Source: Obrimoposthia wandeli | Taxonomy: Eukaryota | Reading direction: 5' to 3' | NCBI GenBank assembly: GCA_977020255.1 | Contig: CDROCS010002637.1 | Span: 1 to 64,000, forward strand | Length of the DNA: 64,000 nucleotides | In this document: in pieces, positions 4,493 through 64,000 of the stretch | Position numbering within the stretch: position 1 is the first letter of the stretch | Layout of the letters: every line of letters starts with the position of its first letter | Notes under the pieces: generated by a model | Seen by the model: the letters and a program-made list of their open reading frames with translations, nothing else | Database searches by the model: none | Told to the model about the DNA's origin: nothing | Translations under genes and position numbers: made by a program

Positions 4493-5102
4493 CAGTTTTA
4501 CTTCCCCCTTTATGGGCCAGTGGTTTTTTTCTCTGTGGTTTCGCGATGCTTTTGGTGGATAATTCTATGACTGCCTCGCGGCTCTCCCCCGGAGCTAAGT
4601 TGTCTAAGGTCCAATCGCCGATAGCATAGCGTATCAGGCGTAGTGTCGGAAAGCCTACAGCTGCCGTCATGCGCCTTACTTGTCGATTTTTACCTTCTTT
4701 TATTTTCAATTCGACCCATGAAGTGGGCTTGTTTTTCCGCTCTCTTATCGGTGGGTTTCTAAGCCATATATCGGGCTCAGTCATTAACTTCGCCTTTGCC
4801 GGTTTGGTTTTACCATCCTTTAGTTCAACACCATTGATTAGTGATGTCAGCGCTTGTTGATCTACTTCGCCTTCAACTTGAACCCAATAAGTCTTCTCTA
4901 GTTTGAAGGCTGGATTAGCAAGTTGATGCTGGGTTTGGCCATCATCAGTGAGTATAAGTAATCCCTCTGAATCGTAATCTAATCTTCCAGCAGGGTAAAA
5001 ACCTTTTTTAGAGACAAATTCTTTTAAGGTGGTGCGCTCGCCATCATCAGTAAACTGACTGAGCACCTGGAAGGGTTTGTTAAGTAGTATTAAATTGGCC
5101 AA
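4464..5102 (-). CDS. rluE: 23S rRNA pseudouridine synthase RluE (start probably TTG at 5102; ORF track starts 5138)
   Basis: [16 protein letters not shown], catalytic [38 protein letters not shown]. Confidence 0.88.
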
Positions 5103-5253
5103 AAAGCTCTCACGGAATAAGTAATTAAAATCGAGCATTATACGGGGTGCAAGCTAAGTGCGATAGTGTTGGAGGTCACTTGGACGGTTAAGCAGGTGTA
5201 AACGCGCGTGATGACACAGAGTGTTGCTGATTGTGAAATGAGTATTTGAGTGA

Positions 5254-5312
5254 TTACATGAGAGGCTAGTTGTCATTGGTTGTAAAATATACAACTAGTC
5301 TCTCTCATGTAA
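5254..5312. repeat. Long inverted repeat downstream of acnB (terminator-like hairpin)
   Basis: TTACATGAGAG-GCTAGTTGT (5254-5273) versus ACAACTAGTCTCTCTCATGTAA (5291-5312): about 20-bp stem with a 2-nt bulge and 17-nt loop. Confidence 0.7.
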
Positions 5313-5330
5313 GCTAATACAAAAAATATA

Positions 5331-8145
5331 TTAGCTAGGGTTCATCATCTTAACAGGTACGCTAGTGACTAGCGCTTCTAATGGAGGAGCGAAATCCGTC
5401 AAGTTGATACCTTCAACTGCTTTTTTATATTCATCCAAACTTGGTGTACGCCCAAGGATAGTTGACAAAACAACGACAGGTGTCGAGGCAAGCAGGGATT
5501 CGCCTTTCTTTTCAGCGGTATCTTCTACTACGCGGCCTTGAAATAAGCGCGTTGAAGTTGCTAGTACCGTATCGCCTTTTTCAGCTTTCTCTTGGTTACC
5601 CATGCATAAGTTACAACCAGGGCGCTCAAGGTACATTATGTTTTCGTATTTGGTACGTGCTGCATTTTTAGGCACAGCATCATCAAATTCGAATCCTGAG
5701 TACTTCTTAAGAACTTCCCAGTCACCTTCAGCTTTTAGCTCATCAACAATGTTGTATGTTGGTGGCGCTATGACTAAGGGAGCTTTAAACTCAACTTTGC
5801 CGTATTCTTTCTCAATGTTTCTTAACATTTGAGAAATAATTTTCATATCACCTTTGTGGACCATGCATGAGCCAACAAAGCCTAGATCAACTTGCTTACT
5901 GCCGTTGTAATATGAAATAGGTCTGATGGCATCATGTGTATAACGCTTTGAAACGTCTTCATTGTTAACGTCAGGATCCGCGATCATTGGTGCATCAATT
6001 GTATCTAGGTCTACCACTAATTCTGCGAAGTATTTTGCATTTTCGTCGGGTCTTAATGCAGGCTTCTCAGCAGATTTAATATCAGAAATACGCTTATCAG
6101 CTTTATCAATTAGACCCTGAAGAACTTGAGCTTGGTTGTCCATGCCTTTGTTAATCATGATTTGGATGCGGCTTTTAGCAATTTCTAATGATTCAATTAA
6201 AGTTTCATCTTCAGAAATACAGATAGAGGCTTTCGCCTTCATTTCTGCTGTCCAATCGGTAAAGGTGAAGGCTTGGTCGGCAAGCAAGGTGCCGATATGC
6301 ACTTCAATGACTCTACCTTGGAAAACGTTATCGCCAAACTTCTTGAGCATCTGGGCCTGTGTTGCATGTACTACATCACGGAAGTCAATATGGCTCTTCA
6401 TGCTTCCTTTGAAAGTCACTTTTACAGACTCAGGAATTGGCATGTTGGCTTCACCTGTCGCAAGTGCAAGGGCAACTGTTCCAGAGTCAGCGCCAAATGC
6501 CACGCCTTTAGACATTCTAGTGTGAGAGTCGCCACCAATAATAATCGCCCATTCATCAATGGTAATGTCATTCAATACTTTGTGAATAACATCTGTCATT
6601 GGGTAATAAACGCCTTTTGGATCACGGGCTGTAATAAGACCAAACTTATTCATGAAGCTCATAAGTCTAGGAATGTTCGCCTGTGATTTACTATCCCATA
6701 CCGATGCCGTATGACAACCGGATTGATAAGCACCGTCTACAATAGGAGAGATAACCGTTGCGGCCATTGACTCTAGTTCTTGAGAAGTCATTAAACCGGT
6801 AGTATCTTGAGAGCCAACAATGTTCACTGTGACACGTACATCAGATCCAGCGTGAAGGTCTGTCTCAGAGGCAACACCGACTGCGTTTTTATTGAATATT
6901 TTTTCAACCGCAGTAAGGCCTTGGTCTTTATACGAAATTTCTTTAGAAGAAGCGTAGACAGGCTCTATATCTATACCAAGTACTTTGGATGCAAATGTTT
7001 GTAACTTTTTGCCAAATACAATTGCGTATGAACCGCCAGCTTTCATGAACTCTACTGATTGAGGAGTGAAAGCAGAAGATATATCAGCCAGTTCTTTGTC
7101 GGCGTTATATAGCTTTTTCTCTTTAGTGTTAATGGTCAGTACGGTGCCAGTATCCACAGAGTAGGTTTTCTTCTCAAGAATAGTCTGCCATTTCAAGTTA
7201 AGAACAGCTTCTTAAGCATTAGCATCAAGCTTTTTCCTTTTTAACCCACCCTTAAGATCTAAAACTATCACTGCCAGTCACACCCACGGTGGTTAAAAAG
7301 ATAGGTGAAATACCGTTAGTTCCCGCAACAATCGGGGCGAAGTTCACAAAAGGAATATAAGGGCTTGCTTGATCTCCAGCCCATAAAGCAACGTTGTTAA
7401 TGCCTGACATACGAGAGGAGCCAACACCCATTGTGCCTTTTTCAGCGATTAACATCACTTTTTTGCCAGGGTATTGTTTTTGCAGATCTTGAATTTCAGC
7501 TTGTGCTGCTTCTGATATCAAACACTTACCGTGTAATTCACGATCTGAGCGGGAATGAGCCTGATTGCCAGGGGATAGAAGATCGGTAGAAATATCACCT
7601 TCAGCAGCGATATAGGTGACGACATCGATCGTTTCTTTTATTTCAGGAAGCGTGGTAAAAAAATCGGCTCTTGCATAGCTTTCAAGAATATCTTTGGCAT
7701 TACTATTGCCTTCTTTAAAGGCTTTTTCCATTCGATCTGTATCTGAGTCGTACAAAAACACTTGAGTTTTTAGTACATCCGCTGCAGGTTTAGACACTGC
7801 ATTATTATCAGAAAGCGCGAGGTCAAGTAGGACTTCTATCGAGGGTCCGCCTTTCATGTGGGATAGTTGTTCAAAAGCAAAGCTGGACGAGATTTCTGCT
7901 ACGACAGACTCCGCTAAAATGATTTCTTTTAAGAATTGAGTTTTTACGCTGGCAGCGCTAGTTGTTCCAGGCAAAGTGTTATAGATAAAGAAATCAAGAG
8001 AATCCTTTCGGTGCTCATGGTTTACATCTTTAATTTGAGCAATAATTTCCGATAGTAATTCGGCGCCGTCAATTGGCTTAGGCGCTAATCCTAGCTCATT
8101 TTTACGGGTTTCAATTTCTTTTATGTATTCTAAATACAAACTCAT
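5331..8145 (-). CDS. acnB: Bifunctional aconitate hydratase 2 / 2-methylisocitrate dehydratase, interrupted by indels at about 7195-7275
   Basis: ORFs 7252..8151 and 5331..7196 are the N- and C-parts; GDSHTRMSKG, GSCMVH and PGCNLCMG [4Fe-4S] cysteines are intact; GAGG RBS before ATG 8145. Confidence 0.9.
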
Positions 8146-11907: not shown

Positions 11908-12022
11908 AATTACTGATAATCGGTTAGGTTTTGATCCTAAAGGGTTTGTCACTTACGTAATAAATGCTAGATTGGTATAAACAAGAATAAGTATTCACGG
12001 GTTTAATGGATTGGAGTTATTT

Positions 12023-12922
12023 ATGACGGATCAAGTATTACTCGATCGATTTGATTTTTTAGCAGCTAACGTTGAAGAAATTGTTCTCCTTTTAAATAGC
12101 CAGGGAGAAGTGCTGCGTGCCAGCGCAGGTGTTGAGGATTGGTTAAAAATAGATTGCATGGTTAGTTTGTCTTTCCCTCTGCTATTCTCTTCGCAGATGA
12201 TGACCCAGGTCAATGCGCAGATTGATTCTGCTATGCAAAGTGATGAAGCTGTTTTGGCTCAGTTTGCGATGAAAGAGCAAGAAGCCCCTGATTGGGTGGA
12301 GCTTGGCCTAAAAGAGCCGCATGTATGGCACACACGTTGTCAGCGTTGTGGTGACGATGAGCTGATTTATGTGATTGCAGATCGCAGTGAGGAAATTAAG
12401 TTAGAACGTAAAATACATAATCAAGCGCAGCGCGATCCTCTCACGGGAGCGTATAACAGACGAGCACTAATGACGGTCTTAAGTCAGTCTGTCGCTCAGG
12501 CTCAACGTTATGATTGGTTGTGTTCCTTTTTAATGGTGGACATCGATGGCTTTAATCGTTTGAACGATAGCTTAGGTTGGGATGCCGGGGATATGATTCT
12601 GCAGCACTTGGTCTCTAACTTACATAGCTTCAAGCGGACCGCTGATTTTCTTGCTCGATATGCCGATGATAAGTTTGTGATGTTTTTACCTGAAACGAAC
12701 ATTGAGCAATCGGGCCTCGCTGCTGAGCGAGTGCGTAAAATGGTTGAAGAATTAGAGATCCCGTTTCCTCAAGGGGATTTAAAGTTCACCGTTAGCATAG
12801 GGGCAGCGACATTACGTGGTGTTGAAGAAACACATGAGTCTATGCTGCGTCGTGCTGAAGAGAATCTCATGATCGCCAAAGAAAGCGGTCATAACCGGGT
12901 CGAGGTGGATGAGTTGGCATAG
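12023..12922 (+). CDS. PAS-like + degenerate GGDEF domain protein
   Basis: RDPLTGAYNRR, DIDGFNRLNDSLGWDAGD, TVSIGAA; signature is ADDKF instead of GGDEF; RxxD (RTAD) I-site present; GGAG RBS before ATG 12023. Confidence 0.85.
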   Translation: MTDQVLLDRFDFLAANVEEIVLLLNSQGEVLRASAGVEDWLKIDCMVSLSFPLLFSSQMMTQVNAQIDSAMQSDEAVLAQFAMKEQEAPDWVELGLKEPHVWHTRCQRCGDDELIYVIADRSEEIKLERKIHNQAQRDPLTGAYNRRALMTVLSQSVAQAQRYDWLCSFLMVDIDGFNRLNDSLGWDAGDMILQHLVSNLHSFKRTADFLARYADDKFVMFLPETNIEQSGLAAERVRKMVEELEIPFPQGDLKFTVSIGAATLRGVEETHESMLRRAEENLMIAKESGHNRVEVDELA

Positions 12923-43151: not shown

Positions 43152-43895
43152 ATGAGTATTGAAGGTAAAGTTGCCTTAGTGACCGGTGCGTCACGTGGTA
43201 TAGGACGCGCCATTGCGGAGATTTTAGGTCAACAGGGCGCGATTGTGATAGGTACGGCAACCAGCGACAACGGTGCTGCAGCGATTGCGCAATATCTTGA
43301 TGCGGCGGGCATTAAAGGCACTGGGATGTCTTTGGATGTTGCTAGTGACGAATCTGTTGCGCAAGTGATGAAGCAGATTACGGATGAGTATGGTGTTATC
43401 TCTATCGTGGTAAATAATGCGGGTATTACCCGTGATAATATCATGTTACGCATGAAAGCTGATGAGTGGGATAGTGTGATTAACACTAACTTGAGTTCAT
43501 TGTATCGAGTATCTAAAGGATGTTTACGTGGCATGACCAAGCAGCGCTGGGGTCGTATTATCAGTGTCAGTTCTGTGGTGGCTTCTATGGGTAATGCAGG
43601 TCAGGCAAACTACGCTGCTGCAAAATCGGGAATGGAAGGCTTTACCCGCGCCTTGGCTCGTGAGATCGGTTCGCGTAATGTGACAGTCAACTGCGTCGCG
43701 CCCGGTTTTATTGATACCGATATGACAAAAGATTTACCGCAGGCGCACAAAGACAAATTACAGGCGCAAATTCCGATGAACCGCCTTGGTGCACCAGAGG
43801 AAATTGCCAGTGTAGTGGCGTTTTTAGCGAGTGAAGGAGCCGGTTATGTCACTGGTGAAACCATCCAAGTTAACGGTGGAATGTACATGGCGTAG
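43152..43895 (+). CDS. fabG: 3-oxoacyl-ACP reductase
   Basis: TGASRGIG, NNAGITRDN, YAAAKSG, VAPGFIDTDMT, VNGGMYM. Confidence 0.97.
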   Translation: MSIEGKVALVTGASRGIGRAIAEILGQQGAIVIGTATSDNGAAAIAQYLDAAGIKGTGMSLDVASDESVAQVMKQITDEYGVISIVVNNAGITRDNIMLRMKADEWDSVINTNLSSLYRVSKGCLRGMTKQRWGRIISVSSVVASMGNAGQANYAAAKSGMEGFTRALAREIGSRNVTVNCVAPGFIDTDMTKDLPQAHKDKLQAQIPMNRLGAPEEIASVVAFLASEGAGYVTGETIQVNGGMYMA

Positions 43896-51538: not shown

Positions 51539-52118
51539 CTAAGTATGTGGGGCGTTGTATTCGCGAATATAGACCTTAGTTTGGCAGTGCATCCTAATGG
51601 TTCCTCATCTATATATCTGCCAAATAGGTAGGGTAAAGTGCTTGGGCCAGCAGGAGATAAGCTGTGATTATTTGACGGTCTTTGAGCTTAGCGCCAGTCA
51701 AATTAGAGGGTGTTCTTTTGATGATGAAAATACGATAGATAGGCACACGCTTGGCGAAATAAAGAATAAAAAGGTTCGCTTTAGTGCTTAAAAATATCTT
51801 TATGTTGCAATAGCGTCATCAATAAATCTAAATCACTCGGGTAAAGTTGTTGTATAAGCTGATAAGTGGTTAATTTGCGCGCTATTTTCTGTTTTGATCT
51901 TTCATCAGTGGTAAAGAGGTACTTTTTTTAAGGTTTTTATTAGCTTTGCCGCAACACTTCTATGATAGATCGACTATGCTCATGTATAATCGACAAGTTT
52001 TTTGGTGGGATATTTTGTGGTCGTACAAATAATAAGCACAATGCTGTCGGCTCTAAACTAGAGTTGTAACGGGCGATTACGATATCTTAAAATTTATAAT
52101 CTATTTTGGGTGAGGTGT

Positions 52119-53456
52119 ATGATCAAGATCAATAAAGGTCTAGATCTACCGATTGAAGGTACTGTAGCGCAGGAATTAACTGCCGCGCCTACTATACGTT
52201 CGGTCGCCGTGAGTGGCCCTGATTACGTCGGTTGTAAACCGACGATGGCCGTGAAGGTAGGAGATCGAGTTAAACTCGGTCAAGTGATCTTTTCTGACAA
52301 GAAAATCAAAGGTGTACATATCACAGCGCCAGCTGCTGGTACTGTAAGTGAAATTAACCGTGGCGATAAACGTCTGTTCCTCTCTGTCGTGATCGATGTA
52401 GATCAGGAAGAAGAGGCAGTAGAATTTGCCAAGCATTCAACGCAACAGCTGCCAGCATTAAGTGGTGAGCAAGTTGCAGAGCAATTGCAAGTGTCTGGAA
52501 TGTGGAGCGCTTTGCGTACCCGTCCTTTCAGCAAGGTGCCAGCGAGTGACTCAACAGCAGCGGCTGTCTTTGTTACTGCAATGGATACAAATCCATTGGC
52601 TGTTGACCCTGCAAAAATCATTGCAATGGATGCGCAAGCTTTTAGTGATGGTTTAACTGTCATTTCCAAGCTGACAGCTAAAACTTACTTGTGTAAGTCT
52701 GCTGGTAGCGATGTGCCTACTGTAGAAGGTGTGACGGTCGAAGAGTTCTCTGGTGTTCATCCAGCGGGCAATGTCGGCACACATATTCACTTTCTAGAAC
52801 CCGTGTCGCGCGATAAAGTAGTTTGGACGATAGGTTATCAGGATGTGATTGCTATTGGCAAATTGTTCACTGAAGGAAAGCTAAACGTTGAACGTGTTAT
52901 CAGTATATCGGGCCCAGCAGTTGATAAGCCTGTATTGCTTCGCACGCGCGTAGGTGCAGACTTAGCGCAACTTCTTGAAGGTGTTGCCAGCACAGAAGGC
53001 AATCGTGTGATTAGTGGGTCTGTTTGGAATGGTCGAACAGCTCATGGTGCATTGAACTACTTAAGCCGTTACGCCAACCAAGTAACCGTGCTAGAGCAAG
53101 GTGATAAACGCGAATTTTTAGGCTGGGCAGTACCTGGAGCAAATCGCTTCTCTGTACTCAATGTCTTCAGTTCAGCGCTATCAGGTGCTAAGAAGTTTGC
53201 TTTTTCTACCACCACTCATGGCTCAGAACGCGCCATGGTACCGGTAGGTCAATTCGAGCCTCTTATGCCTCTTGATATTTTGCCGACACAATTGCTCCGT
53301 GCAATCGTGACAGGTGATATTGTCTCTGCTATGCAGTTAGGCGCTCTGGAACTCGATGAAGAAGATCTGGCACTTTGTACGTTTGCCTGTCCTGGCAAGT
53401 ACGAGTACGGGCCGATTCTTCGCGATAACTTAACACGCATCGAGAAAGAGGCTTAA
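52119..53456 (+). CDS. nqrA: Na+-NQR subunit A
   Basis: [56 protein letters not shown]. Confidence 0.97.
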
Positions 53457-53460
53457 GAGT

Positions 53461-54669
53461 ATGAGTTTAAGAAATATTCTTGATAAAATGGAGCCGCATT
53501 TCCATAAAGGCGGTAAGTATGAAAATTGGTACGCGCTTTACGAAGCGGCAGATACCATTTTCTACACCCCAGGTGAAGTCACTAAGAGCGCATCTCATGT
53601 GCGTGATGGCGCTGATTTAAAGCGTATGATGATCTTGGTTTGGGCCTGTACTTTTCCGGCGGTATTCTTTGGTATGTACAACGTTGGCCTACAAGCTAAC
53701 AACGCCATGGATGCAATGGGGGTGGCTGAAGCTTCAGGTTGGCGTGGTGCTATAGCGGCGGCTTTGACCGGTTTTGATGCTAACAGCGTTTGGGATAACA
53801 TTATCTATGGAGCCACTTATTGGCTACCAATTTATCTAGTGACGTTCGTCGTCGGTGGATTCTGGGAAGTGTTGTTTGCAATGAAACGTGGTCACGAAGT
53901 TAACGAAGGTTTCTTTGTTACTTCCATCCTGTTCTCTCTGACCCTTCCCCCTTCAATTCCACTGTGGCAAGTTGCTTTAGGCATCAGCTTTGGTGTGGTT
54001 ATCGGTAAAGAAGTATTTGGAGGCACCGGTAAAAACTTCCTTAACCCGGCTCTAACGGGTCGTGCTTTCCTATTCTTTGCTTACCCAGCGCAAATGTCAG
54101 GTGATGCAATTTGGACAGCCGTTGATGGTTTCTCTGGTGCAACGCCTCTCGGTCTTGCAGCAACAGGGGGTGTTGAGGCTATTATCGCTAGCAACCTTAC
54201 TTGGATGGATGCTTTCATGGGTCGTATTCAAGGCTCTGTCGGTGAAGTGTCTACCTTAGCTATTTTGATTGGTGGTGGTGTGCTTGTCGCAATGCGACTG
54301 GCCGCTTGGCGAATTGTGGCGGGTGTCTTCATGGGCATGGTTGCCATGAGTACGATACTCAATCTTATCGGCTCTGATACTAATCCAATGTTCCAGCTAC
54401 CGTTCTACTGGCACATGGTCTTAGGTGGTTTTGCGTTTGGTATGTTCTTTATGGCTACCGACCCAATATCTGCTTCAATGACCAATGTTGGTAAGTGGTA
54501 CTTCGGTGCTCTGATCGGTGTCATGGTGGTGCTTATTCGTGTCGTTAACCCAGCTTTCCCAGAAGGCATGATGTTGGCGATTCTGTTTGGTAACTTGTTC
54601 GCTCCATTGATTGATAGCTTTGTAGTACAGGCCAACATTAAACGGAGGTTACAGCGCAATGGCAGCTAA
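53461..54669 (+). CDS. nqrB: Na+-NQR subunit B
   Basis: [16 protein letters not shown] site [26 protein letters not shown]. Confidence 0.97.
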
Positions 54670-55438
54670 TAACGATACGATAGGTAAAACGATTGGTGTA
54701 ACCGTTGCTCTCTGTGTTGTTTGTTCTGTTGTAGTATCTGCAGCAGCGGTACTGTTAAAGCCGCAGCAAATAAAAAACAAAGAGTTAGACCGTCAGTCAA
54801 ACATTTTGGCAGCAGCGAACATCGACTATAAAGGTCAAGATGTTCAGAAACTATTTGCCGAGAGAATTACAACGAAATACGTTGAGCTCAAAACCGGTAA
54901 ATATGTTGAAAAGCCAGAGGGTTATAAAGACTCCAAACGTGCGTCGAAAGAACCTGAACTGTCTACAGCGCTCGCGCGTAAAGATGATCTTGCTTCTATC
55001 AAGCGTACAGCGGATGTTATGCCTATTTACTTGATTGAAAAAGATCAGCAACTAAGTACGGTTATCTTGCCCGTTCACGGCTATGGCCTGTGGTCGACAC
55101 TCTATGGTTTTTTAGCATTAGAGGGTGATTTAAATACTGTTGTCGGTTTGGGTTTCTACTCACACGCGGAGACCCCAGGTCTAGGTGGTGAAGTTGATAA
55201 TCCTAAGTGGAAGGCACTATGGCCAGGTAAAGAAGTTTACGCCCCAGGATCAATGGAGCCAAAACTTGGCTTGATCAAAGGTTCGGTTAATGCGGCGTCA
55301 GCAGATGCTAAATACCAAATCGATGGTCTCTCAGGTGCAACCTTGACCAGTAATGGTGTGTCGAATCTGGTTAAATTTTGGATGGGTAAAAATGGCTTTG
55401 CCACTTACCTGACTAACTTGAAAGCAGGGGAGAGCTAA
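54659..55438 (+). CDS. nqrC: Na+-NQR subunit C
   Basis: [22 protein letters not shown] site [11 protein letters not shown]. Confidence 0.97.
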
Positions 55439-55441
55439 GCA

Positions 55442-56092
55442 ATGTCTGAAACTAAAGACTTAATTGTAAAGCCAGTTATTGCAAACAACCCAATTGCGCT
55501 GCAAATTTTGGGTGTATGTTCTGCGCTGGCGGTAACATCTAACTTAAACACTGCGGTGGTAATGACTTTAGCGGTAATGACAGTAACAGCTTTTTCAAGC
55601 ATGTTTGTCTCGCTAATTCGCAATCACATGCCCAGTACTATTCGTATTATCTGTCAAATGACGATCATTGCATCATTGGTTATCGTCGTCGATCAGATTC
55701 TAAAGGCAGTTGCCTACGATGTGTCTAAGCAGCTATCTGTGTTTGTTGGCTTGATTATCACTAACTGTATTGTTATGGGTCGCGCAGAAGCATTCGCGAT
55801 GAAGAATCCGCCGATTCCGTCATTCTTTGATGGTATAGGTAACGGCCTTGGCTATGGCGCAGTACTGATGTTCGTTGGTTTTATCCGCGAATTATTCGGT
55901 TCTGGTTCACTGTTTGGTATCGAAATTCTTCCGCTGGTAACTAATGACGGCTGGTACATGAGTAATGGTTTATTACTGCTACCACCGAGTGCATTCTTTA
56001 TTATCGGTATGATGATTTGGATTATCCGCACCGTCGATAAAAAACAAGTTGAAGCACCTGACTTTGTGATCGCTCACAATACTAAGAAGTAG
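55442..56092 (+). CDS. nqrD: Na+-NQR subunit D
   Basis: [27 protein letters not shown]. Confidence 0.97.
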
Positions 56093-56100
56093 AGTGCGTA

Positions 56101-56709
56101 ATGGAACAGTACATTAGCTTGTTTGTAAAAGCTGTGTTTGTTGAAAACATGGCATTGTCGTTCTTCTTAGGCATGTGTACTTTCTTGGCTATCTCTAAGA
56201 AAGTACAGACGGCGATTGGCTTGGGGATTGCGGTTATCGTTGTATTGGCGATAACAACCCCTGTTAACAACCTACTTTACAACAATCTGTTGAAAGAAGG
56301 CGCGTTGGCATGGGCCGGTTACCCCGATGTAGATTTGAGCTTCCTTGGCTACATTTCTTACATTGGCGTTATCGCGGCGATGGTACAGATACTAGAGATG
56401 ATCTTAGATAAGTTCTTCCCGGCACTGTACAACGCTCTCGGCGTATTCTTACCCTTGATTACAGTTAACTGCGCCATTATGGGTGCGGCGCTATTCATGG
56501 TAGAGCGTGATTACAATTTCAGTGAATCAGTTGTCTACGGTGTCGGCGCAGGTCTTGGCTGGGCATTGGCAATAGCAACACTGGCGGGTATTCGCGAAAA
56601 GCTAAAATACAGCGATGTTCCAGCGGGTCTGCGTGGTTTAGGTATTACCTTTATCTCGGTAGGATTGATGGCACTTGGCTTTATGTCATTCTCTGGCGTA
56701 CAGCTATAA
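56101..56709 (+). CDS. nqrE: Na+-NQR subunit E
   Basis: [29 protein letters not shown]. Confidence 0.97.
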
Positions 56710-56739
56710 CATGATAATTGATAAAGGAATATATTAGCC

Positions 56740-57969
56740 ATGAATGCTGAAATTATTCTCGGTGTTGTCATGTTTACCGTGGTAGTGCTTGCACTAGTCG
56801 CGGTAATTTTGGCAGCACGTTCCAAATTAGTAAGTACGGGTAACGTTAGTATTGGTATTAACGATGACCCGTCTAAATCGATCGAAGTGACAGCCGGTGG
56901 CAAACTGCTACAGACTTTATCTTCAGCGGGTATCTTTGTACCTTCTGCCTGTGGTGGCGGTGGTACTTGCGCACAGTGTAAGTGTCAAGTTCTCAGTGGC
57001 GGTGGCTCAATGCTTCCAACTGAAGAATCACACTTCACAATGCGTGAAGCAAAAGAGGGCTGGCGCTTAGCTTGCCAAGTAGCTGTAAAGCAGGATATGC
57101 AACTTGAACTCGAAGATGAAATTTTCGGTGTTAAGAAGTGGACTTGTACAGTGGGTGCTAACCCCAACTTGGCAACTTTCATCAAAGAGCTAACACTTGA
57201 GTTACCTGAAGGTGAGAACGTAGATTTCCGCGCTGGTGGTTATGTGCAACTTGAATGCCCTCCACACACTGTCGATTACAAAGATTTTGATATCGAAGAA
57301 GAGTATCGTGGCGATTGGGATAAGTTTAACGTGTGGAATAATATTTCCACGGTAAGCGAAACCACTATTCGTGCTTACTCAATGGCCAACTACCCAGAAG
57401 AGCGAGGGATTGTAAAGTTCAATATCCGTATCGCTTCGCCGCCTCCGGGCAGTCAGGGTATCCCACCGGGTATCATGTCATCGTATGTCTTCAGCTTGAA
57501 GCCAGGTGATAAGATCGACGTTTATGGACCTTTCGGCGAGTTTTTCGCCAAAGATACTGACAACGAAATGGTCTTTATTGGTGGTGGTGCTGGCATGGCA
57601 CCAATGCGCTCGCACATCTTTGATCAGTTAAAGCGTTTAAATTCAACACGCAAGATCTCTTTTTGGTATGGAGCTCGTTCATTGCGCGAAGCTTTTTACA
57701 ACGAAGAGTACGATATGCTTGCCGCGGAGAATGAAAACTTTAAATGGCACTTAGCTCTGTCCGACCCACAACCAGAAGATAACTGGGACGGCATGACTGG
57801 TTTCATCCACAATGTATTGTTTGAAAACTATCTTAAGGATCACGAAGCGCCTGAAGATTGTGAATTCTATATGTGTGGACCACCAATGATGAATAATGCT
57901 GTTGTCCAAATGTTAGTTGATTTGGGTGTTGAGCGTGAAAACATCTTCCTCGATGACTTTGGTGGCTAA
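56740..57969 (+). CDS. nqrF: Na+-NQR subunit F
   Basis: [12 protein letters not shown] 2Fe-2S motif, [34 protein letters not shown]. Confidence 0.97.
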
Positions 57970-57974
57970 GCTAG

Positions 57975-59021
57975 ATGTTTAAGTCTCTATTTAGCGTACC
58001 TAAGTACGCTTTACAACGGCTGGCAGTTTATCTGCTGGCCGTTTTTGTACTCAGCCCTACAAATACCTTTGCAAGTGACATTGTTGCTGTAGAAGGCCCT
58101 ACGATGGGTACTGCTTATCATGTTAAGTGGGTAGATGAAAAAACAAATACCACTGTGGATAAGCAACAAATACAACAAAAGATTGATCAGCTGTTGCAAG
58201 ATATCAACCAACAGATGTCAACTTATATTAAAAATTCTGAATTATCGCTATTCAATCAAAAGCCTAGCGGTAGTGAACAAAAAGTATCGAGTGAACTTTA
58301 TCAAGTCTTAAAACTTGCCCAGCAAATTAGTCACAGCACTGAAGGTGCCTATGACATCAGTGTGGGGCCGTTAGTCAATTTGTGGGGTTTTGGTCCAGAT
58401 GGGCGTATTACAAAAGCCCCTAGTGATAGTGACATATCAAGAGTACGTCAGCGAGTAGGGTTTCAAAAGTTGCAACTATTGGCTGATAATACAATCAAGA
58501 AGAATGCTGATCTCTATATCGATTTATCGTCAATTGCCAAAGGGTATGCCGTTGATTTGGTTTCCCAATTATTAGAGCAATACAATATCAGCGCTTACCT
58601 TGTTGAAATTGGTGGCGAACTGCGAGCAAAAGGTAGCAAACCGAATGGTTTAGAATGGCGTATTGCTGTTGAAAGTCCTACGAGTGGGCGCGCTATTCAA
58701 AAAATCGTTTCTGTATCAGGTGTTGCCGTGGCGACATCAGGTGACTACCGTAATTATTTTGAACAAGATGGAGTGCGCTATTCGCACACCATTGATACTA
58801 AAACGGCCAGGCCGGTCAGTCATAACTTAGCATCCGTGACTGTTTTAGCGAAAGACAGTGCTCTTGCAGATGCATTGGCAACCGCGTTTCTCGCAATGGG
58901 GCAAAAGCGTGCTTATCAATATGCAGTGGCGAATAATATTGATGCCTTTTTTATCAGTAAAGAAGCGGATGCTTTTGTTGAGAAAATGACAGCGGGTTTT
59001 GCGAAACGCGTGATTAAGTGA
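57975..59021 (+). CDS. apbE: FAD:protein FMN transferase ApbE
   Basis: GPTMGTAYHVK, DLSSIAKGYAVD, ATSGDYRNYFE, ADALAT; follows nqrF. Confidence 0.95.
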   Translation: MFKSLFSVPKYALQRLAVYLLAVFVLSPTNTFASDIVAVEGPTMGTAYHVKWVDEKTNTTVDKQQIQQKIDQLLQDINQQMSTYIKNSELSLFNQKPSGSEQKVSSELYQVLKLAQQISHSTEGAYDISVGPLVNLWGFGPDGRITKAPSDSDISRVRQRVGFQKLQLLADNTIKKNADLYIDLSSIAKGYAVDLVSQLLEQYNISAYLVEIGGELRAKGSKPNGLEWRIAVESPTSGRAIQKIVSVSGVAVATSGDYRNYFEQDGVRYSHTIDTKTARPVSHNLASVTVLAKDSALADALATAFLAMGQKRAYQYAVANNIDAFFISKEADAFVEKMTAGFAKRVIK

Positions 59022-59063
59022 CGGCTCGGCAATCTAGAATTTAAATTTTATTAAGAGGTAATT

Positions 59064-59303
59064 ATGGGAACGTTTGTAGCAGTGTTAAGTGTCTTATTGC
59101 TTGTCGTGATTGCGATGTCAGTGGGTGTTTTATTAGGCCGTAAGCCAATTGCGGGCTCTTGTGGTGGCATGGCATCCTTAGGTATGGATACCGCATGTGA
59201 TATTTGTGCGGGTGATAAACAAATTTGCGAAGATGAAAATGAGCGTGTTGCACGCGAGGCTCGTGAGTCTAAAACAACAGATTTGGGCTACGAAATTAAA
59301 TAA
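59064..59303 (+). CDS. nqrM: Na+-NQR maturation protein NqrM
   Basis: TM segment then KPIAGSCGG..CDIC..C. Confidence 0.93.
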   Translation: MGTFVAVLSVLLLVVIAMSVGVLLGRKPIAGSCGGMASLGMDTACDICAGDKQICEDENERVAREARESKTTDLGYEIK

Positions 59304-59458: not shown

Positions 59459-60859
59459 ATGGCTGAATATGACTATGATGTAGTAGTAATTGGATCGGGT
59501 CCTGCAGGTGAAGGTGCGGCGATGAACGCCGCTAAGCACGGCCGAAAAGTAGCAATCATTGAAGAGCAGCAATCCGTGGGTGGTAATTGTACTCACAAGG
59601 GAACAATTCCATCTAAGTCACTACGTCACTCAGTGAAGCAAATCGTTGAGTTTAATACCAACCCGATGTTTCGTGAAATCGGTGAGCCACGCTGGTTTTC
59701 GTTCCAAAAAGTGCTTAATCGTGCTGAGAAAGTTATGGCTAACCAAGTCATGCTTAGAACAAATTTTTATGCGCGTAACCGCGTCGACGTTTTCTTCGGT
59801 ACCGCCGAATTTCACGATGCCAAGACAGTTATTGTTAAGGGCACTGCTCGTGGCGATGAGACACTTAAAGCAAAAAATATAGTGATTGCAACGGGCTCTA
59901 GCCCATATAGCCCTGCCGATATAGATTTTGATCACCCGCGTATCTATAACTCTGACACTATTCTTAAGCTCAATCATACGCCGCGTACTATTATTATATT
60001 CGGTGCGGGAGTTATCGGTTGTGAATACGCCTCTATCTTCAGTGGTTTAGGCGTGAAGGTCGATTTGGTCGACACACGAGATCGTCTATTGTCTTTCCTT
60101 GATGGCGAAATTTCCGACGCTCTGAGCTATCACTTGCGTAACACCGCGGTTAAAATTCGTCACAATGAGGAATACGAAAATGTAGCAACCGATGAAAAAG
60201 GCGTTATTCTTTCGCTGAAATCGGGTAAGCGAATTCGTGCAGATGCGTTCCTTTGGTGTAATGGGCGCACAGGTAATACCGCTGAATTGAAGCTTGAGAA
60301 CGCAGGTTTAACGGCAAATAACCGCGGACAATTAGAAGTAGATCAACGCTATCGTACTGCTGTTGAAGGTATTTCGGCAGCAGGTGATGTTATTGGTTGG
60401 CCAAGCCTTGCATCAGCGGCAATAGACCAAGGACGCTCAGCTTCTTCTGATTTCTTAGAATCGGGTGATTTCCGTTATATCAATGAAGTGCCGACAGGTA
60501 TTTATACCATTCCTGAGATCAGTTCTATTGGTAAGACAGAAGAAGAGCTGACGTCAGAAAGAGTTCCCTACGAAGTTGGGCAGGCATTCTTTAAAGATAC
60601 GGCTCGTGCTCAAATTACCAGTCAGCCGGTGGGTATGCTTAAAATCTTATTTGATCCTGAATCATTAAAGATATTAGGTATACACTGTTTCGGTGATCAA
60701 GCTTCTGAGATTATTCACATCGGTCAAGCAATTATGCGTCAGGAGGGAGAGGGAAATACCATTAACTACTTCGTTAATACCACCTTCAACTATCCGACCA
60801 TGGCTGAAGCTTATCGTGTAGCTGCGATTGCAGGCTTGAACAGAATTGCGCATCTGTAA
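59459..60859 (+). CDS. sthA: Soluble pyridine nucleotide transhydrogenase
   Basis: [55 protein letters not shown]. Confidence 0.96.
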
Positions 60860-60867
60860 AATGTTGT

Positions 60868-60899
60868 AATAAAAAAGCGCCCAAGGGCGCTTTTTTATT
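60868..60899. terminator. Bidirectional intrinsic terminator
   Basis: AATAAAAAAGCGCCC-aa-GGGCGCTTTTTTATT between convergent sthA and 60920..61201. Confidence 0.85.
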
Positions 60900-60919
60900 G
60901 GCTATAATATGTAGGCTAT

Positions 60920-61201
60920 CTACTCTTGATCTTTAGTTTTCTCTTTGTAGTAGCTATCTTCGTAGTATGTGCCTTTTATCTGCAGTTTTTTCTCTACCCA
61001 ACGAGTATAACGACTCCAGATGGCAAACGGGATTATCATCCCTAATCCTATGCCCAACATTAAGCCAGCCCCTTCGTATTCAGGGCTGAACTGTTGTGTG
61101 ACTAAGTCAAAGAATTCAAATTTTTGCAGTAGGTAGTAACAGAGAATTAAAAAGGCGAAACCAATAGCCGTCGCTATGTGATGAGGTAATTTGTTATTCA
61201 A
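60920..61201 (-). CDS. Hypothetical small membrane protein (two TM segments)
   Basis: 93 aa with two hydrophobic segments; ends just before the bidirectional terminator. Confidence 0.7.
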   Translation of the reverse strand: MNNKLPHHIATAIGFAFLILCYYLLQKFEFFDLVTQQFSPEYEGAGLMLGIGLGMIIPFAIWSRYTRWVEKKLQIKGTYYEDSYYKEKTKDQE

Positions 61202-61573
61202 AAGTATATCGATTTATTTATGAGTGAGAGGGTAGCTTATAATATTTTACTTTGGCCTGTCTAGCTGGTAGCTAGGTTAAGCGGTTATCCGTAATTGAAA
61301 CATGAATGCTTTTATCACTAACATACTCGTTATTAGGCAGTATTGCTTCGGTTCGCCATCGTAAGAACACAATGGCTTATTTTATTTTCTCTCTATAATT
61401 TGCTGTTTTCTGGGTGTTAACGGCCTGGTTGACGTCAGATTGAAACATCTGTTTGTTTATATTCCTTAAAAAGCATCAAAAATTCAGCATAATGATCCGC
61501 TTCAATTAAACGGGCTCAGCAAGATACTTGTGCCGATATTATGACTTAATGGATTAGGTCGTCAGGAGACGAC

Positions 61574-62068
61574 ATGCGTTATTTTTTAACTTTACTCAGT
61601 ATTAACTTTTTATTGCTATTGAGCACAGCTACAAGCGCTCAAGATAGTAAGGTAATACTGTCACTCAGCGGATATTCGGCACAGCTGAACCAGCAGGTCA
61701 TTCGCACTTTTAGCTATCAGCAATTAATGACGTTACCGCAAAAAACAGTCGTAACAACGACAAATTGGACAACGGGTGATACCGAATTTAAAGGGCCATT
61801 ACTAAGGGATGTGATCGCCTTGAGTAAAGTCTCGGGCAACAGCTTAACCGCGATAGCGGCCAATGATTACAGTATTGACATCCCTTCTGAAGATTTTGAA
61901 AAATATGACGTTATTCTTGCATTGGAGAAAAACCAAAAACGTTTAACACTCCGCACTAAAGGTCCCATTTGGTTGATCTATCCTTGGTCAGATCATGCAG
62001 AACTGCAACATGGTGTTTATTACTCACGTTCTATTTGGCAATTGATCGAACTTAATAGCCATGACTAA
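61574..62068 (+). CDS. Secreted SUOX/Oxidored_molyb-like protein, PruR-like (no Cys)
   Basis: Sec-type signal ending ATSA; TNW..FKGPLLRD, ANDY..IP, VILA, KGPIWLIYP, WQL motifs; no cysteine; AGGAG RBS. Confidence 0.8.
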   Translation: MRYFLTLLSINFLLLLSTATSAQDSKVILSLSGYSAQLNQQVIRTFSYQQLMTLPQKTVVTTTNWTTGDTEFKGPLLRDVIALSKVSGNSLTAIAANDYSIDIPSEDFEKYDVILALEKNQKRLTLRTKGPIWLIYPWSDHAELQHGVYYSRSIWQLIELNSHD

Positions 62069-64000
62069 GACAACTACGCGGGCTTCAGTTTGGCTTGCTG
62101 CTAGTATGCTGGGTATGATTTTATTAAGTTTGATAAGCTCAGTGCTACTTTTTAAGCAAATATCTAGATTACAAATCAGCAGTGAACGCTCCGAGATGGC
62201 TTTTTTTATGCATCAATACGAGTATGAGTTGCAACGTGCGACAACGTCTTTCGTTGAGGCTTATCCCGAGCCAAAACATAACGATAGTACTGAAATTTTT
62301 GACAAGTGGTTTAATATATTACTCAGTCGTGTCGATAGCATTAGTGAAGGCCCCCTAGGTATTCGCGCTATTAATGATGGATTTGATTTAAACGCGTTAC
62401 AGTACTCTACCGGTAAAATTGAAGCACTTTTACTGGGAACGAAGTTGATTACCAGTGATGAGTTTTTGACTGTGCGTACTCTGTTTTATCAGCAGATAGA
62501 AGCGTCGCACAACTATCAGTTAAAAAGAAACTTTGTCTTTCGCAATGAAGCGTTGGAGCGACAACGTAAGACCTATATCTCCTACCGTAACTCCATACTG
62601 CTCAGTATAATTACTTTTGTGATCGGCTTATTTATGGTGTTCTATCTCTTTGGCAACAACAAAAAACTGATTTTTTTGCAACGTACTTTAGAAGAAAAAG
62701 TTCTATTGCGGACCAAAGCCTTACGCGACAAAAATAGGCATTTACGTAGTGAAGTTGATGAGCGTAATAAAACGCAAGCAAAGCTAGAATCAAGTCAGCA
62801 ACAAATTGAGCTAGCTCATGAAAAGCTGGTGTTTCAAGCTAACTATGATTCCTTAACCGAATTAGCCAATCGAAGCTTCTTCCTCAGTTGCTTTTCCGAT
62901 GCTATTTGCCGAGCACAACGAAACGGTACGCTAGTCGCACTTTTATTCCTAGATTTAGACCGCTTTAAACACGTTAACGATACTATGGGGCACTCGTTTG
63001 GTGATTTATTACTCAAAGAGACATCTCAGAGAATTAATGCAGTACTGCGTACAAGTGATACAGCCGCTCGTTTTGGTGGTGATGAATTTGCAGTGGTACT
63101 CAATGACATTATTGATATTCGTACCATTGATTTAATTGTTGAACGTATTTTGGAAAGTTTGGCCAAGCCATTTCGCCTAGGAGGCAACGATGCTTTCGTC
63201 TCTGCCAGTATAGGTATTGCTATTTATCCTGCCGATGGCGAAAATTCTGAAACATTATTGCGTAAAGCAGACAGTGCGATGTATAAAGCAAAAGAGCTGG
63301 GCCGTAATAACTACCAATACTTTACGTTGGAAATGGATTTACAGGCAAATCAAAGGCGTAAACTAGAGGCTGCGTTATACAAAGCGATGGACAATAAAGA
63401 ATTTAGTTTGAACTTTCAGCCTATCTACAATCTTGAACTGCAAAAAACAGTGGGCGCTGAAGTGCTGTTACGCTGGAAGCATCCGGAGCGTGGATTTATC
63501 TCACCGGCGGAATTTATCCCCTTAGCGGAAGAAGTAGGTTTGATAATTCCTATTGGTGAATGGGTGTTACGCAGTGCCTGTCATTACGCAGCGCAATGGC
63601 CATTGGATGAGAAAGTACCCATGCATATAGCGGTCAATATGTCCTCGCGACAATTTCAGAAAACGGATGTCGCTAGTCTGGTTGAGGAAGTATTGACTGA
63701 AAGTGACCTACCTGCACACCGTTTAGTCTTAGAAATAACGGAAGGCCTACTCATGTCAGATAACCTTCAGATCAGACAGCAGTTAGAGCATATAAGGATG
63801 CTAGGTGTTGGTTTGGCAATAGATGACTTTGGCACGGGTTATTCCTCTTTGAGTTATCTTAAAAAGTTCCCGATCACCACACTGAAGATAGATCAGTCGT
63901 TCATCAAAGACATTAATGTTGATTCTGATGACGATGAACTGATCAAAGGTATTATTTCAATGGCGCATAATTTGCGTTTAAACGTTATCGCCGAAGGTGT
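62061..64000 (+). CDS. Membrane-anchored GGDEF-EAL protein, DcpA-like; 3' end beyond the window; absent from the ORF track
   Basis: My translation from ATG 62061 stays open to 64000: TM1, about 145-aa periplasmic region (WFNILLSRVD), TM2, coiled coil, DLDRFKHVND..RTSD..GGDEF (63075-63089), EVLLRW, EITE, DDFGTGYSSL. Confidence 0.93.
   Translation, partial: MTKTTTRASVWLAASMLGMILLSLISSVLLFKQISRLQISSERSEMAFFMHQYEYELQRATTSFVEAYPEPKHNDSTEIFDKWFNILLSRVDSISEGPLGIRAINDGFDLNALQYSTGKIEALLLGTKLITSDEFLTVRTLFYQQIEASHNYQLKRNFVFRNEALERQRKTYISYRNSILLSIITFVIGLFMVFYLFGNNKKLIFLQRTLEEKVLLRTKALRDKNRHLRSEVDERNKTQAKLESSQQQIELAHEKLVFQANYDSLTELANRSFFLSCFSDAICRAQRNGTLVALLFLDLDRFKHVNDTMGHSFGDLLLKETSQRINAVLRTSDTAARFGGDEFAVVLNDIIDIRTIDLIVERILESLAKPFRLGGNDAFVSASIGIAIYPADGENSETLLRKADSAMYKAKELGRNNYQYFTLEMDLQANQRRKLEAALYKAMDNKEFSLNFQPIYNLELQKTVGAEVLLRWKHPERGFISPAEFIPLAEEVGLIIPIGEWVLRSACHYAAQWPLDEKVPMHIAVNMSSRQFQKTDVASLVEEVLTESDLPAHRLVLEITEGLLMSDNLQIRQQLEHIRMLGVGLAIDDFGTGYSSLSYLKKFPITTLKIDQSFIKDINVDSDDDELIKGIISMAHNLRLNVIAEG

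What the first reader, a model, noticed from the sequence alone, without database searches (positions are those of the whole stretch)
61574..64000. PruR/DcpA-like module: candidate pterin-sensing c-di-GMP switch
Seen: a 164-aa Sec-exported protein with sulfite-oxidase-fold motifs has no cysteine (so no Mo-ligating Cys) and no twin-Arg. Its stop overlaps by 8 nt (ATGACTAA) the start of a TM-periplasmic-TM-GGDEF-EAL protein with intact GGDEF, RxxD, EVL and DDFGTGYSS motifs. Established: in Agrobacterium tumefaciens the Cys-less SUOX-fold periplasmic protein PruR binds pterins and controls the co-transcribed dual DGC/PDE DcpA. The periplasmic NILLSR here resembles the D-x3-SR element I recall for DcpA-type sensor domains. 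Inference: this marine gammaproteobacterium has an equivalent extracellular-pterin-to-c-di-GMP circuit. Automated pipelines would probably label the first gene an oxidoreductase, and the ORF track missed the second.
Basis: partly seen in the sequence, partly recalled or inferred. Interest (0 to 1): 0.75.

Follow-up and report, generated by a model that had tools for sequence, protein, structure and literature searches.

The report
PruR–DcpA pterin-sensing c-di-GMP module

Summary
Observation confirmed in every checkable detail.

**ORF1 (61574..62068):**
- 164 aa, with a Sec signal peptide, no Cys and no twin-Arg.
- By sequence it matches only the four solved PruR pterin-binding proteins (A. 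tumefaciens 7kos, E 2e-28).
- Its AF2 model (pLDDT 91.5) fits them at TM 0.85-0.89. That is about ten orders of E-value better than sulfite oxidases, and YedY/MsrP scores lower still.
- The pterin pocket is intact: N97, Y99 and W155 correspond to At N102, Y104 and W160.

**ORF2 (62061 to the window end):**
- Its start overlaps the ORF1 stop by 8 nt.
- Layout: TM, a ~145-aa four-helix periplasmic bundle, TM, coiled coil, GGDEF, EAL. All visible catalytic motifs are intact.
- About 55 codons lie beyond the window.

**Family context:**
- In 76 PruR-linked partner proteins from other genomes the same periplasmic domain recurs.
- The published "invariant" Trp of WX7E is Phe here, and is Trp in only 35/76.

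**Not shown here:** pterin binding, the PruR-DcpA contact, and the direction of the switch.

**Verdict:** a new member of a known kind (Greenwich et al., PNAS 2024). The scan has already noted two other PruR modules on other pieces of this genome. Interest is low to moderate.

The parts
61202..61573 (+). Upstream intergenic region with the presumed promoter and the ribosome-binding site AGGAG (61564-61568). No known riboswitch or other RNA family.
   Evidence: Sequence. Promoter-like hits are no more than chance (5 found vs 4.3 expected). Rfam scan at E<=1 gave only sub-threshold sRNA noise, all of it near 60836-60940.
61574..62068 (+). pruR-type gene: a 164-aa periplasmic pterin-binding protein of truncated SUOX fold. 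Signal peptide is aa 1-22 (61574-61639); the mature protein is about 142 aa. Pocket residues N97, Y99, W155. W65 stands where SUOX enzymes carry the Mo-ligating Cys. No Cys.
   Evidence: PF00174. PDB 7kos 2.2e-28, 7rkb 5.7e-28, 7kp2 2.5e-25, 7kom 3.7e-15. Y99 and W155 invariant, N97 in >=90% of 24 homologues; model pLDDT 91.5, TM 0.85-0.89 to the PruR structures.
62061..62068 (+). 8-nt overlap ATGACTAA between the pruR stop and the dcpA start, implying translational coupling.
   Evidence: The same 8-nt overlap is present in loci L004, L005 and L007, in L002 at the aligned start, and in L001.
62061..64000 (+). dcpA-type gene, cut by the window end at codon 646. Orthologues are 698-710 aa, so about 55-60 codons are missing.
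62085..62153 (+). Transmembrane helix 1 (about aa 9-31), preceded by a short positively charged cytoplasmic N-terminus.
   Evidence: Hydropathy and AF2 helix 5-38.
62154..62585 (+). DcpA-type periplasmic sensor domain (about aa 32-175, roughly 144 aa), an all-helical bundle. Conserved residues are Q52, E56 (the E of WX7E, with F48 in place of W), N85, S89 and R90 (NILLSR).
   Evidence: E56 and R90 invariant, Q52 and S89 in >=90% of 32 sequences; counts over 76 sequences; pLDDT 90.3, helices 40-67, 76-96, 98-105, 110-124 and 132 onward; only helical sensor bundles match.
62586..62651 (+). Transmembrane helix 2 (about aa 176-197).
62652..62837 (+). Cytoplasmic coiled-coil / signalling-helix linker (aa 198-259). 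No HAMP or PAS domain.
   Evidence: AF2 gives a continuous helix 132-209. Pfam finds no domain between TM2 and GGDEF. The LEE+V..RT..L motif is shared with PruR-linked kinases.
62838..63311 (+). GGDEF diguanylate cyclase domain (aa 260-417) with I-site RTSD (330), active site GGDEF (339), DSLTELANR (263) and DLDRFKHVND (298).
63369..63998 (+). EAL phosphodiesterase domain (aa 437-646, C-terminus missing). Visible motifs: EVLLR (467), AVNMS (524), EITE (558), DDFGTGYSS (588), LKID (608), IAEG (643).
   Evidence: Orthologues continue with VE...QGY(F/Y)YSKPL.

Best explanation
This is a two-gene PruR-DcpA operon. ORF1 is exported by Sec into the periplasm. There it binds a small excreted pterin, most likely a reduced monapterin/neopterin-type molecule. 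The pterin ring would stack between Y99 and W155 and hydrogen-bond to N97, in the shortened cleft of a sulfite-oxidase-like fold that can no longer hold molybdenum cofactor. The loaded protein docks on the four-helix periplasmic bundle of ORF2. The signal passes through TM2 and a coiled-coil linker and shifts the balance between the GGDEF (synthesis) and EAL (breakdown) domains. In this way the redox state or abundance of periplasmic pterin sets cytoplasmic c-di-GMP and hence attachment and biofilm behaviour. Shown here: homology, fold, conserved pocket, operon structure, topology, intact catalytic motifs, and recurrence of the same pairing in many genomes. Inferred by analogy with A. tumefaciens: the ligand, the physical contact, and the direction (pterin-PruR favouring phosphodiesterase activity).
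For: PruR identity by sequence: the only PDB sequences matching ORF1 are four crystallised PruR proteins (2.2e-28 to 3.7e-15). PruR identity by fold: the AF2 model (pLDDT 91.5) has the PruR structures as its top seven Foldseek hits. They score E 4e-15 to 2e-12, TM 0.85-0.89 and rmsd 1.9-2.6 A, against E>=1.4e-5 and TM<=0.31 for Moco enzymes. Pocket: residues shown by mutagenesis and co-crystals to bind pterin (At N102, Y104, W160; PMC11194511) are N97, Y99 and W155 here. They read N-Y-W in all but one of 76 loci (a single Y-to-F). Mo-ligating Cys: there is none. Trp65 sits at the position of At W70. Partner architecture: ORF2 has the published layout of 2 TM flanking a 138-150-aa periplasmic loop, followed by GGDEF and EAL. 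Partner fold: the model is a confident helical bundle (pLDDT 90.3), as the paper predicts for DcpA. Genomic linkage: in 80 genomic loci found with a PruR profile, the gene just downstream nearly always has the same TM-~150 aa-TM N-terminus. The nearest relatives carry GGDEF-EAL and the rest mostly histidine kinases. E56, R90, Q52 and S89 are invariant or nearly so. Coupling and synteny: the 8-nt overlap is conserved. The whole locus nqrF-apbE-nqrM-sthA-small ORF-pruR-dcpA is syntenic in a related MAG.
Against: No biochemical or expression evidence was available here; the only sequencing run holding the stretch is DNA. The published invariant Trp of the DcpA WX7E motif is Phe48. The Pro of the PruR 'PW' motif is Asn64. 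The acidic residue before SR is Asn85. I had no A. tumefaciens DcpA sequence, so the partner domain was matched to the family only through other PruR-linked proteins. No PruA-type pteridine reductase lies in the 64-kb window, and the rest of the genome could not be searched; V. cholerae also lacks one. The last ~55 residues of the EAL domain, which carry the final catalytic Glu and Gln, are outside the window.
Confidence: 0.85

Rival explanations
1. Same partner-switch architecture but a different or modified ligand. This sub-clade of PruR proteins would sense something other than the A. tumefaciens tetrahydromonapterin signal, for example another pteridine or flavin-like heterocycle or another oxidation state, or would couple with the opposite sign.
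For: PruR is the fastest-evolving gene of the syntenic block: 53% identity to the L002 orthologue, against 77% for DcpA and 94% for SthA. The window and its nearest relatives replace the Pro of the PW loop (N/R/H/Y/Q) and the Trp of WX7E (F/Y/L). The 2026 review stresses that the in-vivo ligand is unknown even in A. tumefaciens, and that pocket substitutions may tune specificity.
Against: The three ring-binding residues are unchanged, and N97 is Asn as in A. tumefaciens PruR, not the Asp variant the review links to specificity. Pocket geometry in the model superposes on neopterin-bound 7rkb at 1.9 A. Trp-to-other substitutions in the partner are common across the family, so they do not mark a special clade.
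Confidence: 0.1
2. ORF1 is a small molybdenum-cofactor oxidoreductase (MsrP/YedY- or SUOX-like) and merely neighbours an unrelated GGDEF-EAL protein.
For: It matches Pfam Oxidored_molyb above threshold, and public annotation of relatives reads 'molybdopterin-dependent oxidoreductase'.
Against: There is no Cys at all, so no Mo ligand. The signal is Sec, not Tat. The mature protein is about 142 aa, against about 260 or more for the Moco domains. Foldseek scores YedY/MsrP at E about 1e-3 and sulfite oxidases at >=1.4e-5, versus 4e-15 for PruR. No Moco enzyme appears in the PDB sequence search even at E<=10. The 8-nt overlap and near-universal linkage to the same sensor domain argue against chance adjacency.
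Confidence: 0.01
3. The pair is a decayed or decoupled copy. ORF2 would act as a constitutive or otherwise-regulated DGC/PDE, and ORF1 would no longer control it.
For: Phe replaces the 'invariant' Trp of WX7E. The genome appears to hold further PruR modules, so redundancy could relax selection. The orthologue in Aliamphritea spongicola appears frameshifted.
Against: Both ORFs are intact, with conserved functional residues. The pair is conserved in synteny with L002, with DcpA at 77% identity. The Trp position varies in more than half of all PruR-linked partners, so Phe is not a sign of decay.
Confidence: 0.04

Closest known systems
PruR-DcpA of Agrobacterium tumefaciens (Atu3496-Atu3495; Feirer et al. 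2015, PMC4488946; Greenwich et al. 2024, PMC11194511)
   Same: Both have a Sec-exported, Cys-less protein of truncated SUOX fold, about 165 aa, with the N/Y/W pterin pocket (39-41% identity, rmsd 2.2-2.6 A). Both are co-transcribed with and immediately upstream of a TM-periplasmic helical bundle-TM-GGDEF-EAL enzyme whose two catalytic motifs are both intact.
   Different: The host is a gammaproteobacterium, not an alphaproteobacterium. Here the PW loop is NW, WX7E is FX7E, and the EAL motif reads EVL. The genes overlap by 8 nt. No pteridine reductase gene is known nearby. Nothing has been tested experimentally.
Vibrio cholerae VC1933-VC1934 and VCA0075-CdgA; K. pneumoniae and V. vulnificus PruR (PDB 7kp2, 7rkb, 7kom)
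   Same: These are gammaproteobacterial PruR proteins with solved structures, two of them with neopterin bound. The operon layout is the same. Fold match is TM 0.85-0.89.
   Different: In V. cholerae the two partners each keep only one activity: VC1934 has a degenerate GADEF motif and CdgA is DGC only. The protein here keeps both, like A. tumefaciens DcpA.
PruR-DTB systems (PruR plus a DcpA-type sensor on a TorS/BaeS-like histidine kinase)
   Same: They share the same PruR and the same periplasmic sensor domain with the Q-x3-E and [D/E/N]-x3-S-R motifs. They make up most of the 80 loci retrieved. One was reported by the scan elsewhere in this genome.
   Different: The output is phosphorelay, not c-di-GMP.
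Partner-protein-dependent four-helix-bundle sensors (QseG-QseE, XylFII-LytS, NspS-MbaA, TorT-TorS)
   Same: In each, a periplasmic binding protein docks on a helical membrane sensor domain. QseE and LytS-N are among the best, though weak, structural matches.
   Different: There is no sequence relationship, and the structural scores are in the range expected for any helical bundle. The binding partners have unrelated folds.

Membership tests
PruR pterin-binding protein family | N-terminal secretion signal; about 170 aa | tested here: met
   164 aa. Sec-type signal ending TSA|QD, with no twin-Arg. The model gives helix 2-21 followed by the folded domain.
PruR pterin-binding protein family | SUOX-like fold with truncated Moco cleft | tested here: met
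   The seven best Foldseek hits are PruR crystal structures: E 4e-15 to 2e-12, TM 0.85-0.89, rmsd 1.9-2.6 A. Moco enzymes cover only part of themselves (TM<=0.31; YedY 0.40).
PruR pterin-binding protein family | Mo-ligating Cys absent and replaced by Trp (PW motif, 'conserved in most') | tested here: met
   No Cys anywhere. W65 aligns with At W70. The preceding Pro is Asn here, and is R/H/Y/Q in the nearest relatives.
PruR pterin-binding protein family | Pterin-ring pocket Asn / Tyr / Trp (At N102, Y104, W160) | tested here: met
   N97, Y99 and W155 align to these residues in the 7kos, 7rkb and 7kp2 alignments. Invariant or nearly so among homologues.
PruR pterin-binding protein family | Binds pterins (H4-monapterin preferred) | not testable with these tools
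   Needs purified protein.
PruR pterin-binding protein family | Immediately upstream of a gene with a DcpA-type periplasmic domain | tested here: met
   8-nt overlap with ORF2. Same arrangement in the related loci.
DcpA-type PruR-linked regulator | Two TM segments flanking a periplasmic domain of 138-150 aa | tested here: met
   TM1 at about 9-31 and TM2 at about 176-197, leaving a loop of about 144 aa.
DcpA-type PruR-linked regulator | Glu of the WX7E motif (At E48) | tested here: met
   E56 is invariant in 32 sequences and present in 71/76.
DcpA-type PruR-linked regulator | Trp of the WX7E motif (At W40), published as invariant | tested here: not met
   It is F48 here. However, only 35/76 PruR-linked partners in my sample have Trp (27/62 by an alignment-free pattern). 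The rest have A, L, F, S and others, including kinase-type members that the authors count in the family. So the Trp is not a reliable defining feature, and I do not take its absence as exclusion.
DcpA-type PruR-linked regulator | Predicted four-helix periplasmic bundle ('four-helix CACHE-type bundle' in the paper) | tested here: met
   All-helical model, pLDDT 90.3. Best matches are helical chemoreceptor and kinase sensor domains: McpS Z 13.1, LytS-N 10.8, QseE 9.7. No alpha/beta Cache fold.
DcpA-type PruR-linked regulator | Cytoplasmic GGDEF domain, often followed by EAL | tested here: met
   GGDEF E 3.9e-49 and EAL E 2.9e-63. Motifs are intact as far as the window reaches.
DcpA-type PruR-linked regulator | Direct sequence similarity of the periplasmic domain to A. 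tumefaciens DcpA itself | not tested
   No DcpA sequence was available from any tool. There is no solved structure of this domain. Similarity was shown only to 75 other PruR-linked partners.
DcpA-type PruR-linked regulator | Physical PruR-DcpA interaction and a PruR-dependent DGC/PDE switch | not testable with these tools
   Needs experiment.
Moco-dependent SUOX / MsrP (YedY) oxidoreductases | Conserved Mo-ligating Cys on a long beta-hairpin | tested here: not met
   No Cys in the protein. Trp occupies the homologous position.
Moco-dependent SUOX / MsrP (YedY) oxidoreductases | Tat export of the cofactor-loaded enzyme; full-size Moco domain | tested here: not met
   No twin-Arg. The mature protein is about 142 aa, against chains of 262-463 aa for the enzymes matched.

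The most novel reading that the evidence does not exclude
The window and its nearest relatives (L001-L005) form a PruR-DcpA sub-clade in which PruR evolves much faster than its partner (53% vs 77% identity in a fully syntenic locus). In this sub-clade the PW loop of PruR has lost its Pro and the sensor's WX7E Trp has become Phe, Tyr or Leu. This could mark a re-tuned PruR-sensor interface or a changed pterin specificity in marine Oceanospirillales-like bacteria. Together with two further PruR modules reported for the same genome, it could be one channel of a multi-output pterin-sensing network.
Probability: 0.12. Interest if true: 0.45.

Novelty: new member of a known kind. Interest (0 to 1): 0.25.

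Why it matters
The finding adds a well-supported PruR-DcpA pair with both catalytic domains intact, in a marine gammaproteobacterial lineage whose closest database relatives of PruR are only 59% identical or less. This supports the view that excreted pterins act as signals well beyond plant and animal pathogens.

Two small by-products may help anyone building family definitions:

- The Trp of the published WX7E signature is far from invariant among PruR-linked sensors.
- Q-x3-E together with [D/E/N]-x3-S-R is a better signature.

Neither changes the picture of how the system works. No experimental system exists for this organism.

Tried and rejected
- **Moco enzyme / MsrP reading:** rejected.
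- **True alpha/beta Cache fold for the sensor domain:** rejected. The model is an all-helical bundle. The 'CACHE-type' wording comes from the 2024 paper.
- **Riboswitch (THF, Moco, c-di-GMP) or other RNA family in the 372-bp leader:** none. Only sub-threshold noise, downstream of sthA.
- **Promoter and terminator scans:** uninformative, at chance level.
- **Co-variation between the PruR PW-loop Pro and the sensor Trp as a hint of an interface:** not supported. Trp is replaced in many loci that keep Pro, and the Pro losses sit in one clade, so they could be a single event.
- **PruA/FolM-type pteridine reductase in the window:** none. The only SDR-like ORF is FabG, in the fab cluster at 43152..43895. 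The rest of the genome could not be searched, and word searches of the scan's notes found nothing.
- **Whether the 2024 Dataset S1 already lists this lineage:** could not be checked; the supplement is not held.
- **Earlier findings by sequence:** blank.
- **Sequencing runs:** one DNA run, probably the source sample, holds the stretch and there is no RNA run. Read laying was therefore not used, and co-transcription is not shown.
- **PDB profile search with the sensor domain:** only designed helical bundles, meaning no solved relative.
- **Large protein-representative search:** not used, because nothing here rests on absence of relatives.
Full report
**1. Observation**

ORF1:
- ORF 61574..62068 (+) encodes 164 aa with no cysteine.
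- It starts with a Sec-type signal peptide: a single Arg, a hydrophobic core and ..TSA|QD, with no twin-arginine.
- It is preceded by AGGAG at 61564-61568.
- Pfam places it in Oxidored_molyb (PF00174, E 2.6e-7, above the curated cut-off). NCBIfam has no model for it.

The overlap and ORF2:
- The TAA stop of ORF1 overlaps by 8 nt (ATGACTAA) an ATG at 62061, which opens a frame that runs to the window end (646 codons).
- That protein has two hydrophobic segments, at about 9-31 and 176-197.
- It has a GGDEF domain (aa 260-417, E 3.9e-49) and an EAL domain (aa 437-646, E 2.9e-63, cut at profile position 210 of 236).
- The named motifs are all present: RTSD five residues before GGDEF (330/339), EVLLR (467), DDFGTGYSS (588) and the periplasmic NILLSR (85-90).
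- The usual accessory motifs of active cyclases are also there: DSLTELANR and DLDRFKHVND.
- So are those of active phosphodiesterases: AVNMS, EITE, LKID and IAEG. My reading of these as catalytic consensus rests on general knowledge of the PleD and RocR literature.

**2. The small protein is a PruR**

- A phmmer search of all PDB sequences at E<=10 returns four sequences and nothing else. They are the PruR pterin-binding proteins of A. tumefaciens (7kos/7kou, 2.2e-28), K. pneumoniae (7rkb, 5.7e-28), V. cholerae (7kp2, 2.5e-25) and V. vulnificus (7kom, 3.7e-15).
- These are the structures of Greenwich et al., PNAS 2024 (PMC11194511).
- That paper shows that the pterin ring is sandwiched between At Y104 and W160 and hydrogen-bonded to N102. 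Mutating these residues abolishes function. The Mo-ligating Cys of SUOX enzymes is replaced by Trp (W70) on a shortened hairpin.
- In the printed alignments these positions are Y99, W155, N97 and W65 here.
- Among 24 homologues Y99 and W155 are invariant and N97 nearly so. Across 76 genomic loci the triplet reads N-Y-W in all but one, a single Y-to-F.
- An AlphaFold2 model built on that alignment is confident (pLDDT 91.5, pTM 0.81).
- In Foldseek against the PDB, its top seven hits are the PruR structures: E 4e-15 to 2e-12, target TM 0.85-0.89, rmsd 1.9-2.6 A.
- Sulfite oxidases and dehydrogenases begin only at E 1.4e-5. YedY/MsrP (1xdq/1xdy) begins at about 1e-3, covering less than half of those larger chains.

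**3. The downstream protein is of the DcpA type**

The paper defines DcpA-type partners by two TM segments around a 138-150-aa periplasmic domain. That domain carries a WX7E motif and is predicted to be a four-helix bundle. It is followed by GGDEF with or without EAL, or by a TorS/BaeS-like kinase in the 'PruR-DTB' type.

Related loci:
- I built a PruR profile (A1) and fetched 80 loci from species-representative genomes.
- In nearly all of them the ORF directly after the PruR homologue has TM helices at about 10-30 and 180-200.
- The nearest relatives (L001-L005, L007, L008) carry GGDEF-EAL proteins of 643-802 aa; L001's (643 aa) is frameshift-truncated and L008's (802 aa) is the longest. L004, L005 and L007 have the same 8-nt overlap.
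- Most of the rest carry kinases.

Conserved residues:
- Aligning the N-terminal ~210 residues gives E56 and R90 invariant, and Q52 and S89 at >=90% in 32 sequences (A2).
- Over 76 sequences the counts are E56 71, Q52 67, S89 73 and R90 75. Position 85 is D 48, E 15 and N 8.
- The published 'invariant' Trp is different. It is Phe48 here, and is Trp in only 35/76 sequences by alignment, or 27/62 by an alignment-free pattern.
- I therefore record that feature as not met, but do not treat it as excluding membership.

Fold:
- The AF2 model of residues 1-210 is confident (pLDDT 90.3) and entirely helical. It shows a TM helix, a bundle of helices 40-67, 76-96, 98-105, 110-124 and 132 onward, and a long helix running through TM2 into the cytoplasm.
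- Foldseek finds nothing at E<=1e-3. The weak hits, and the VIA-align list, are dominated by helical sensor domains of kinases and chemoreceptors.
- Examples are McpS at Z 13.1, LytS-N from the XylFII complex at 10.8, and QseE from the QseG complex at 9.7. De novo bundles also appear.
- That is the range expected for any helical bundle, so it shows the fold class and not ancestry.
- It is not an alpha/beta Cache domain. 'CACHE-type' is the paper's phrase.
- No solved structure of this domain exists.

**4. Context and organism**

- Upstream lie nqrF, apbE, nqrM and an SthA-like flavoprotein (Pfam), then a 93-aa membrane ORF on the minus strand without Pfam match, then a 372-bp leader.
- Locus L002, a 'Pseudomonadales bacterium' MAG, is collinear through the whole block.
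- Amino-acid identities to it are SthA 94%, NqrF 89%, NqrM 87%, DcpA 77%, ApbE 67%, the small ORF 64% and PruR 53%.
- This supports a marine, Oceanospirillales-like gammaproteobacterium, and shows the pair is a stable, vertically inherited part of the locus.
- PruR is the fastest-diverging gene of the block. Its best database relative overall is 59% identical.
- The leader holds no Rfam family.
- No pteridine reductase gene lies in the window.
- The scan's notes list two more PruR modules on other pieces of the same genome: one kinase-linked, already followed up as PruR-DTB, and one linked to a cyclase. I could not verify them. The genome entry is large (794 windows on 498 pieces), so a common organism is assumed, not shown.

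**5. Mechanism**

By homology to the A. tumefaciens system, I propose the following sequence:
- ORF1 is exported and binds an excreted, probably reduced, pterin.
- It docks on the ORF2 bundle.
- It biases ORF2 toward phosphodiesterase activity, lowering c-di-GMP and disfavouring attachment.

Established here: the components, their fold, the pocket, the topology, intact catalytic motifs in both domains, translational coupling, and family-wide linkage.

Inferred: the ligand identity, the contact and the sign of the response.

The last ~55-60 residues of the EAL domain are outside the window. Orthologues continue with VE...QGY(F/Y)YSKPL.

**6. Novelty and verdict**

- PruR-DcpA operons were described in 2015, and in 2024 were catalogued as >5,500 unique pairs across Alpha-, Beta-, Gamma- and Deltaproteobacteria. 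Up to four occur per genome. A 2026 review covers them.
- This locus is a correct, well-supported new member of that kind. It has minor sequence peculiarities (NW for PW, FX7E for WX7E, N-x3-SR, EVL) and no evidence of a new mechanism.
- Interest is low to moderate.

Noticed in passing
L001:4967-7044 (Aliamphritea spongicola JCM 16668, AP025283.1): The dcpA orthologue after pruR is split. A 56-aa ORF (4967..5137) has the same 8-nt overlap with pruR and encodes TM1. A 643-aa ORF (5113..7044) in another frame begins inside the periplasmic domain. This is an apparent frameshift near 5105-5113, so either a pseudogene or a sequencing error in a complete genome.
   Followed up: partly
window 61574-62068 versus L002:3729-4151: Within a fully collinear block, PruR is the fastest-diverging gene: 53% identity, against 77% for its partner DcpA and 87-94% for NqrM, NqrF and SthA. 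The pterin pocket residues stay fixed.
   Followed up: partly
76 PruR-linked partner proteins from loci L001-L080 (alignment positions 48-56 and 85-90 of window ORF2): The Trp of the published WX7E signature is present in fewer than half of the partners (35/76). Q-x3-E and [D/E/N]-x3-S-R are nearly universal (E 71, S 73, R 75 of 76). This would be a better family signature than the one in the literature.
   Followed up: yes
window 60920-61201 (-): A 93-aa ORF with predicted membrane helices and no Pfam match lies between sthA and the pruR leader. It is conserved in position and at 64% identity in L002. Function unknown.
   Followed up: partly
window 12011-12922 (+), 14137-15222 (-), 1965-2810 (+): More c-di-GMP-related genes are in the same window.
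   Followed up: partly
window 52110-59303 (+): A complete Na+-NQR cluster by position. NqrF, ApbE and NqrM were confirmed by Pfam. The nqrA-E ORFs at 52110-56709 were inferred from order and size only. The cluster is followed by an SthA-like pyridine nucleotide-disulphide oxidoreductase.
   Followed up: partly
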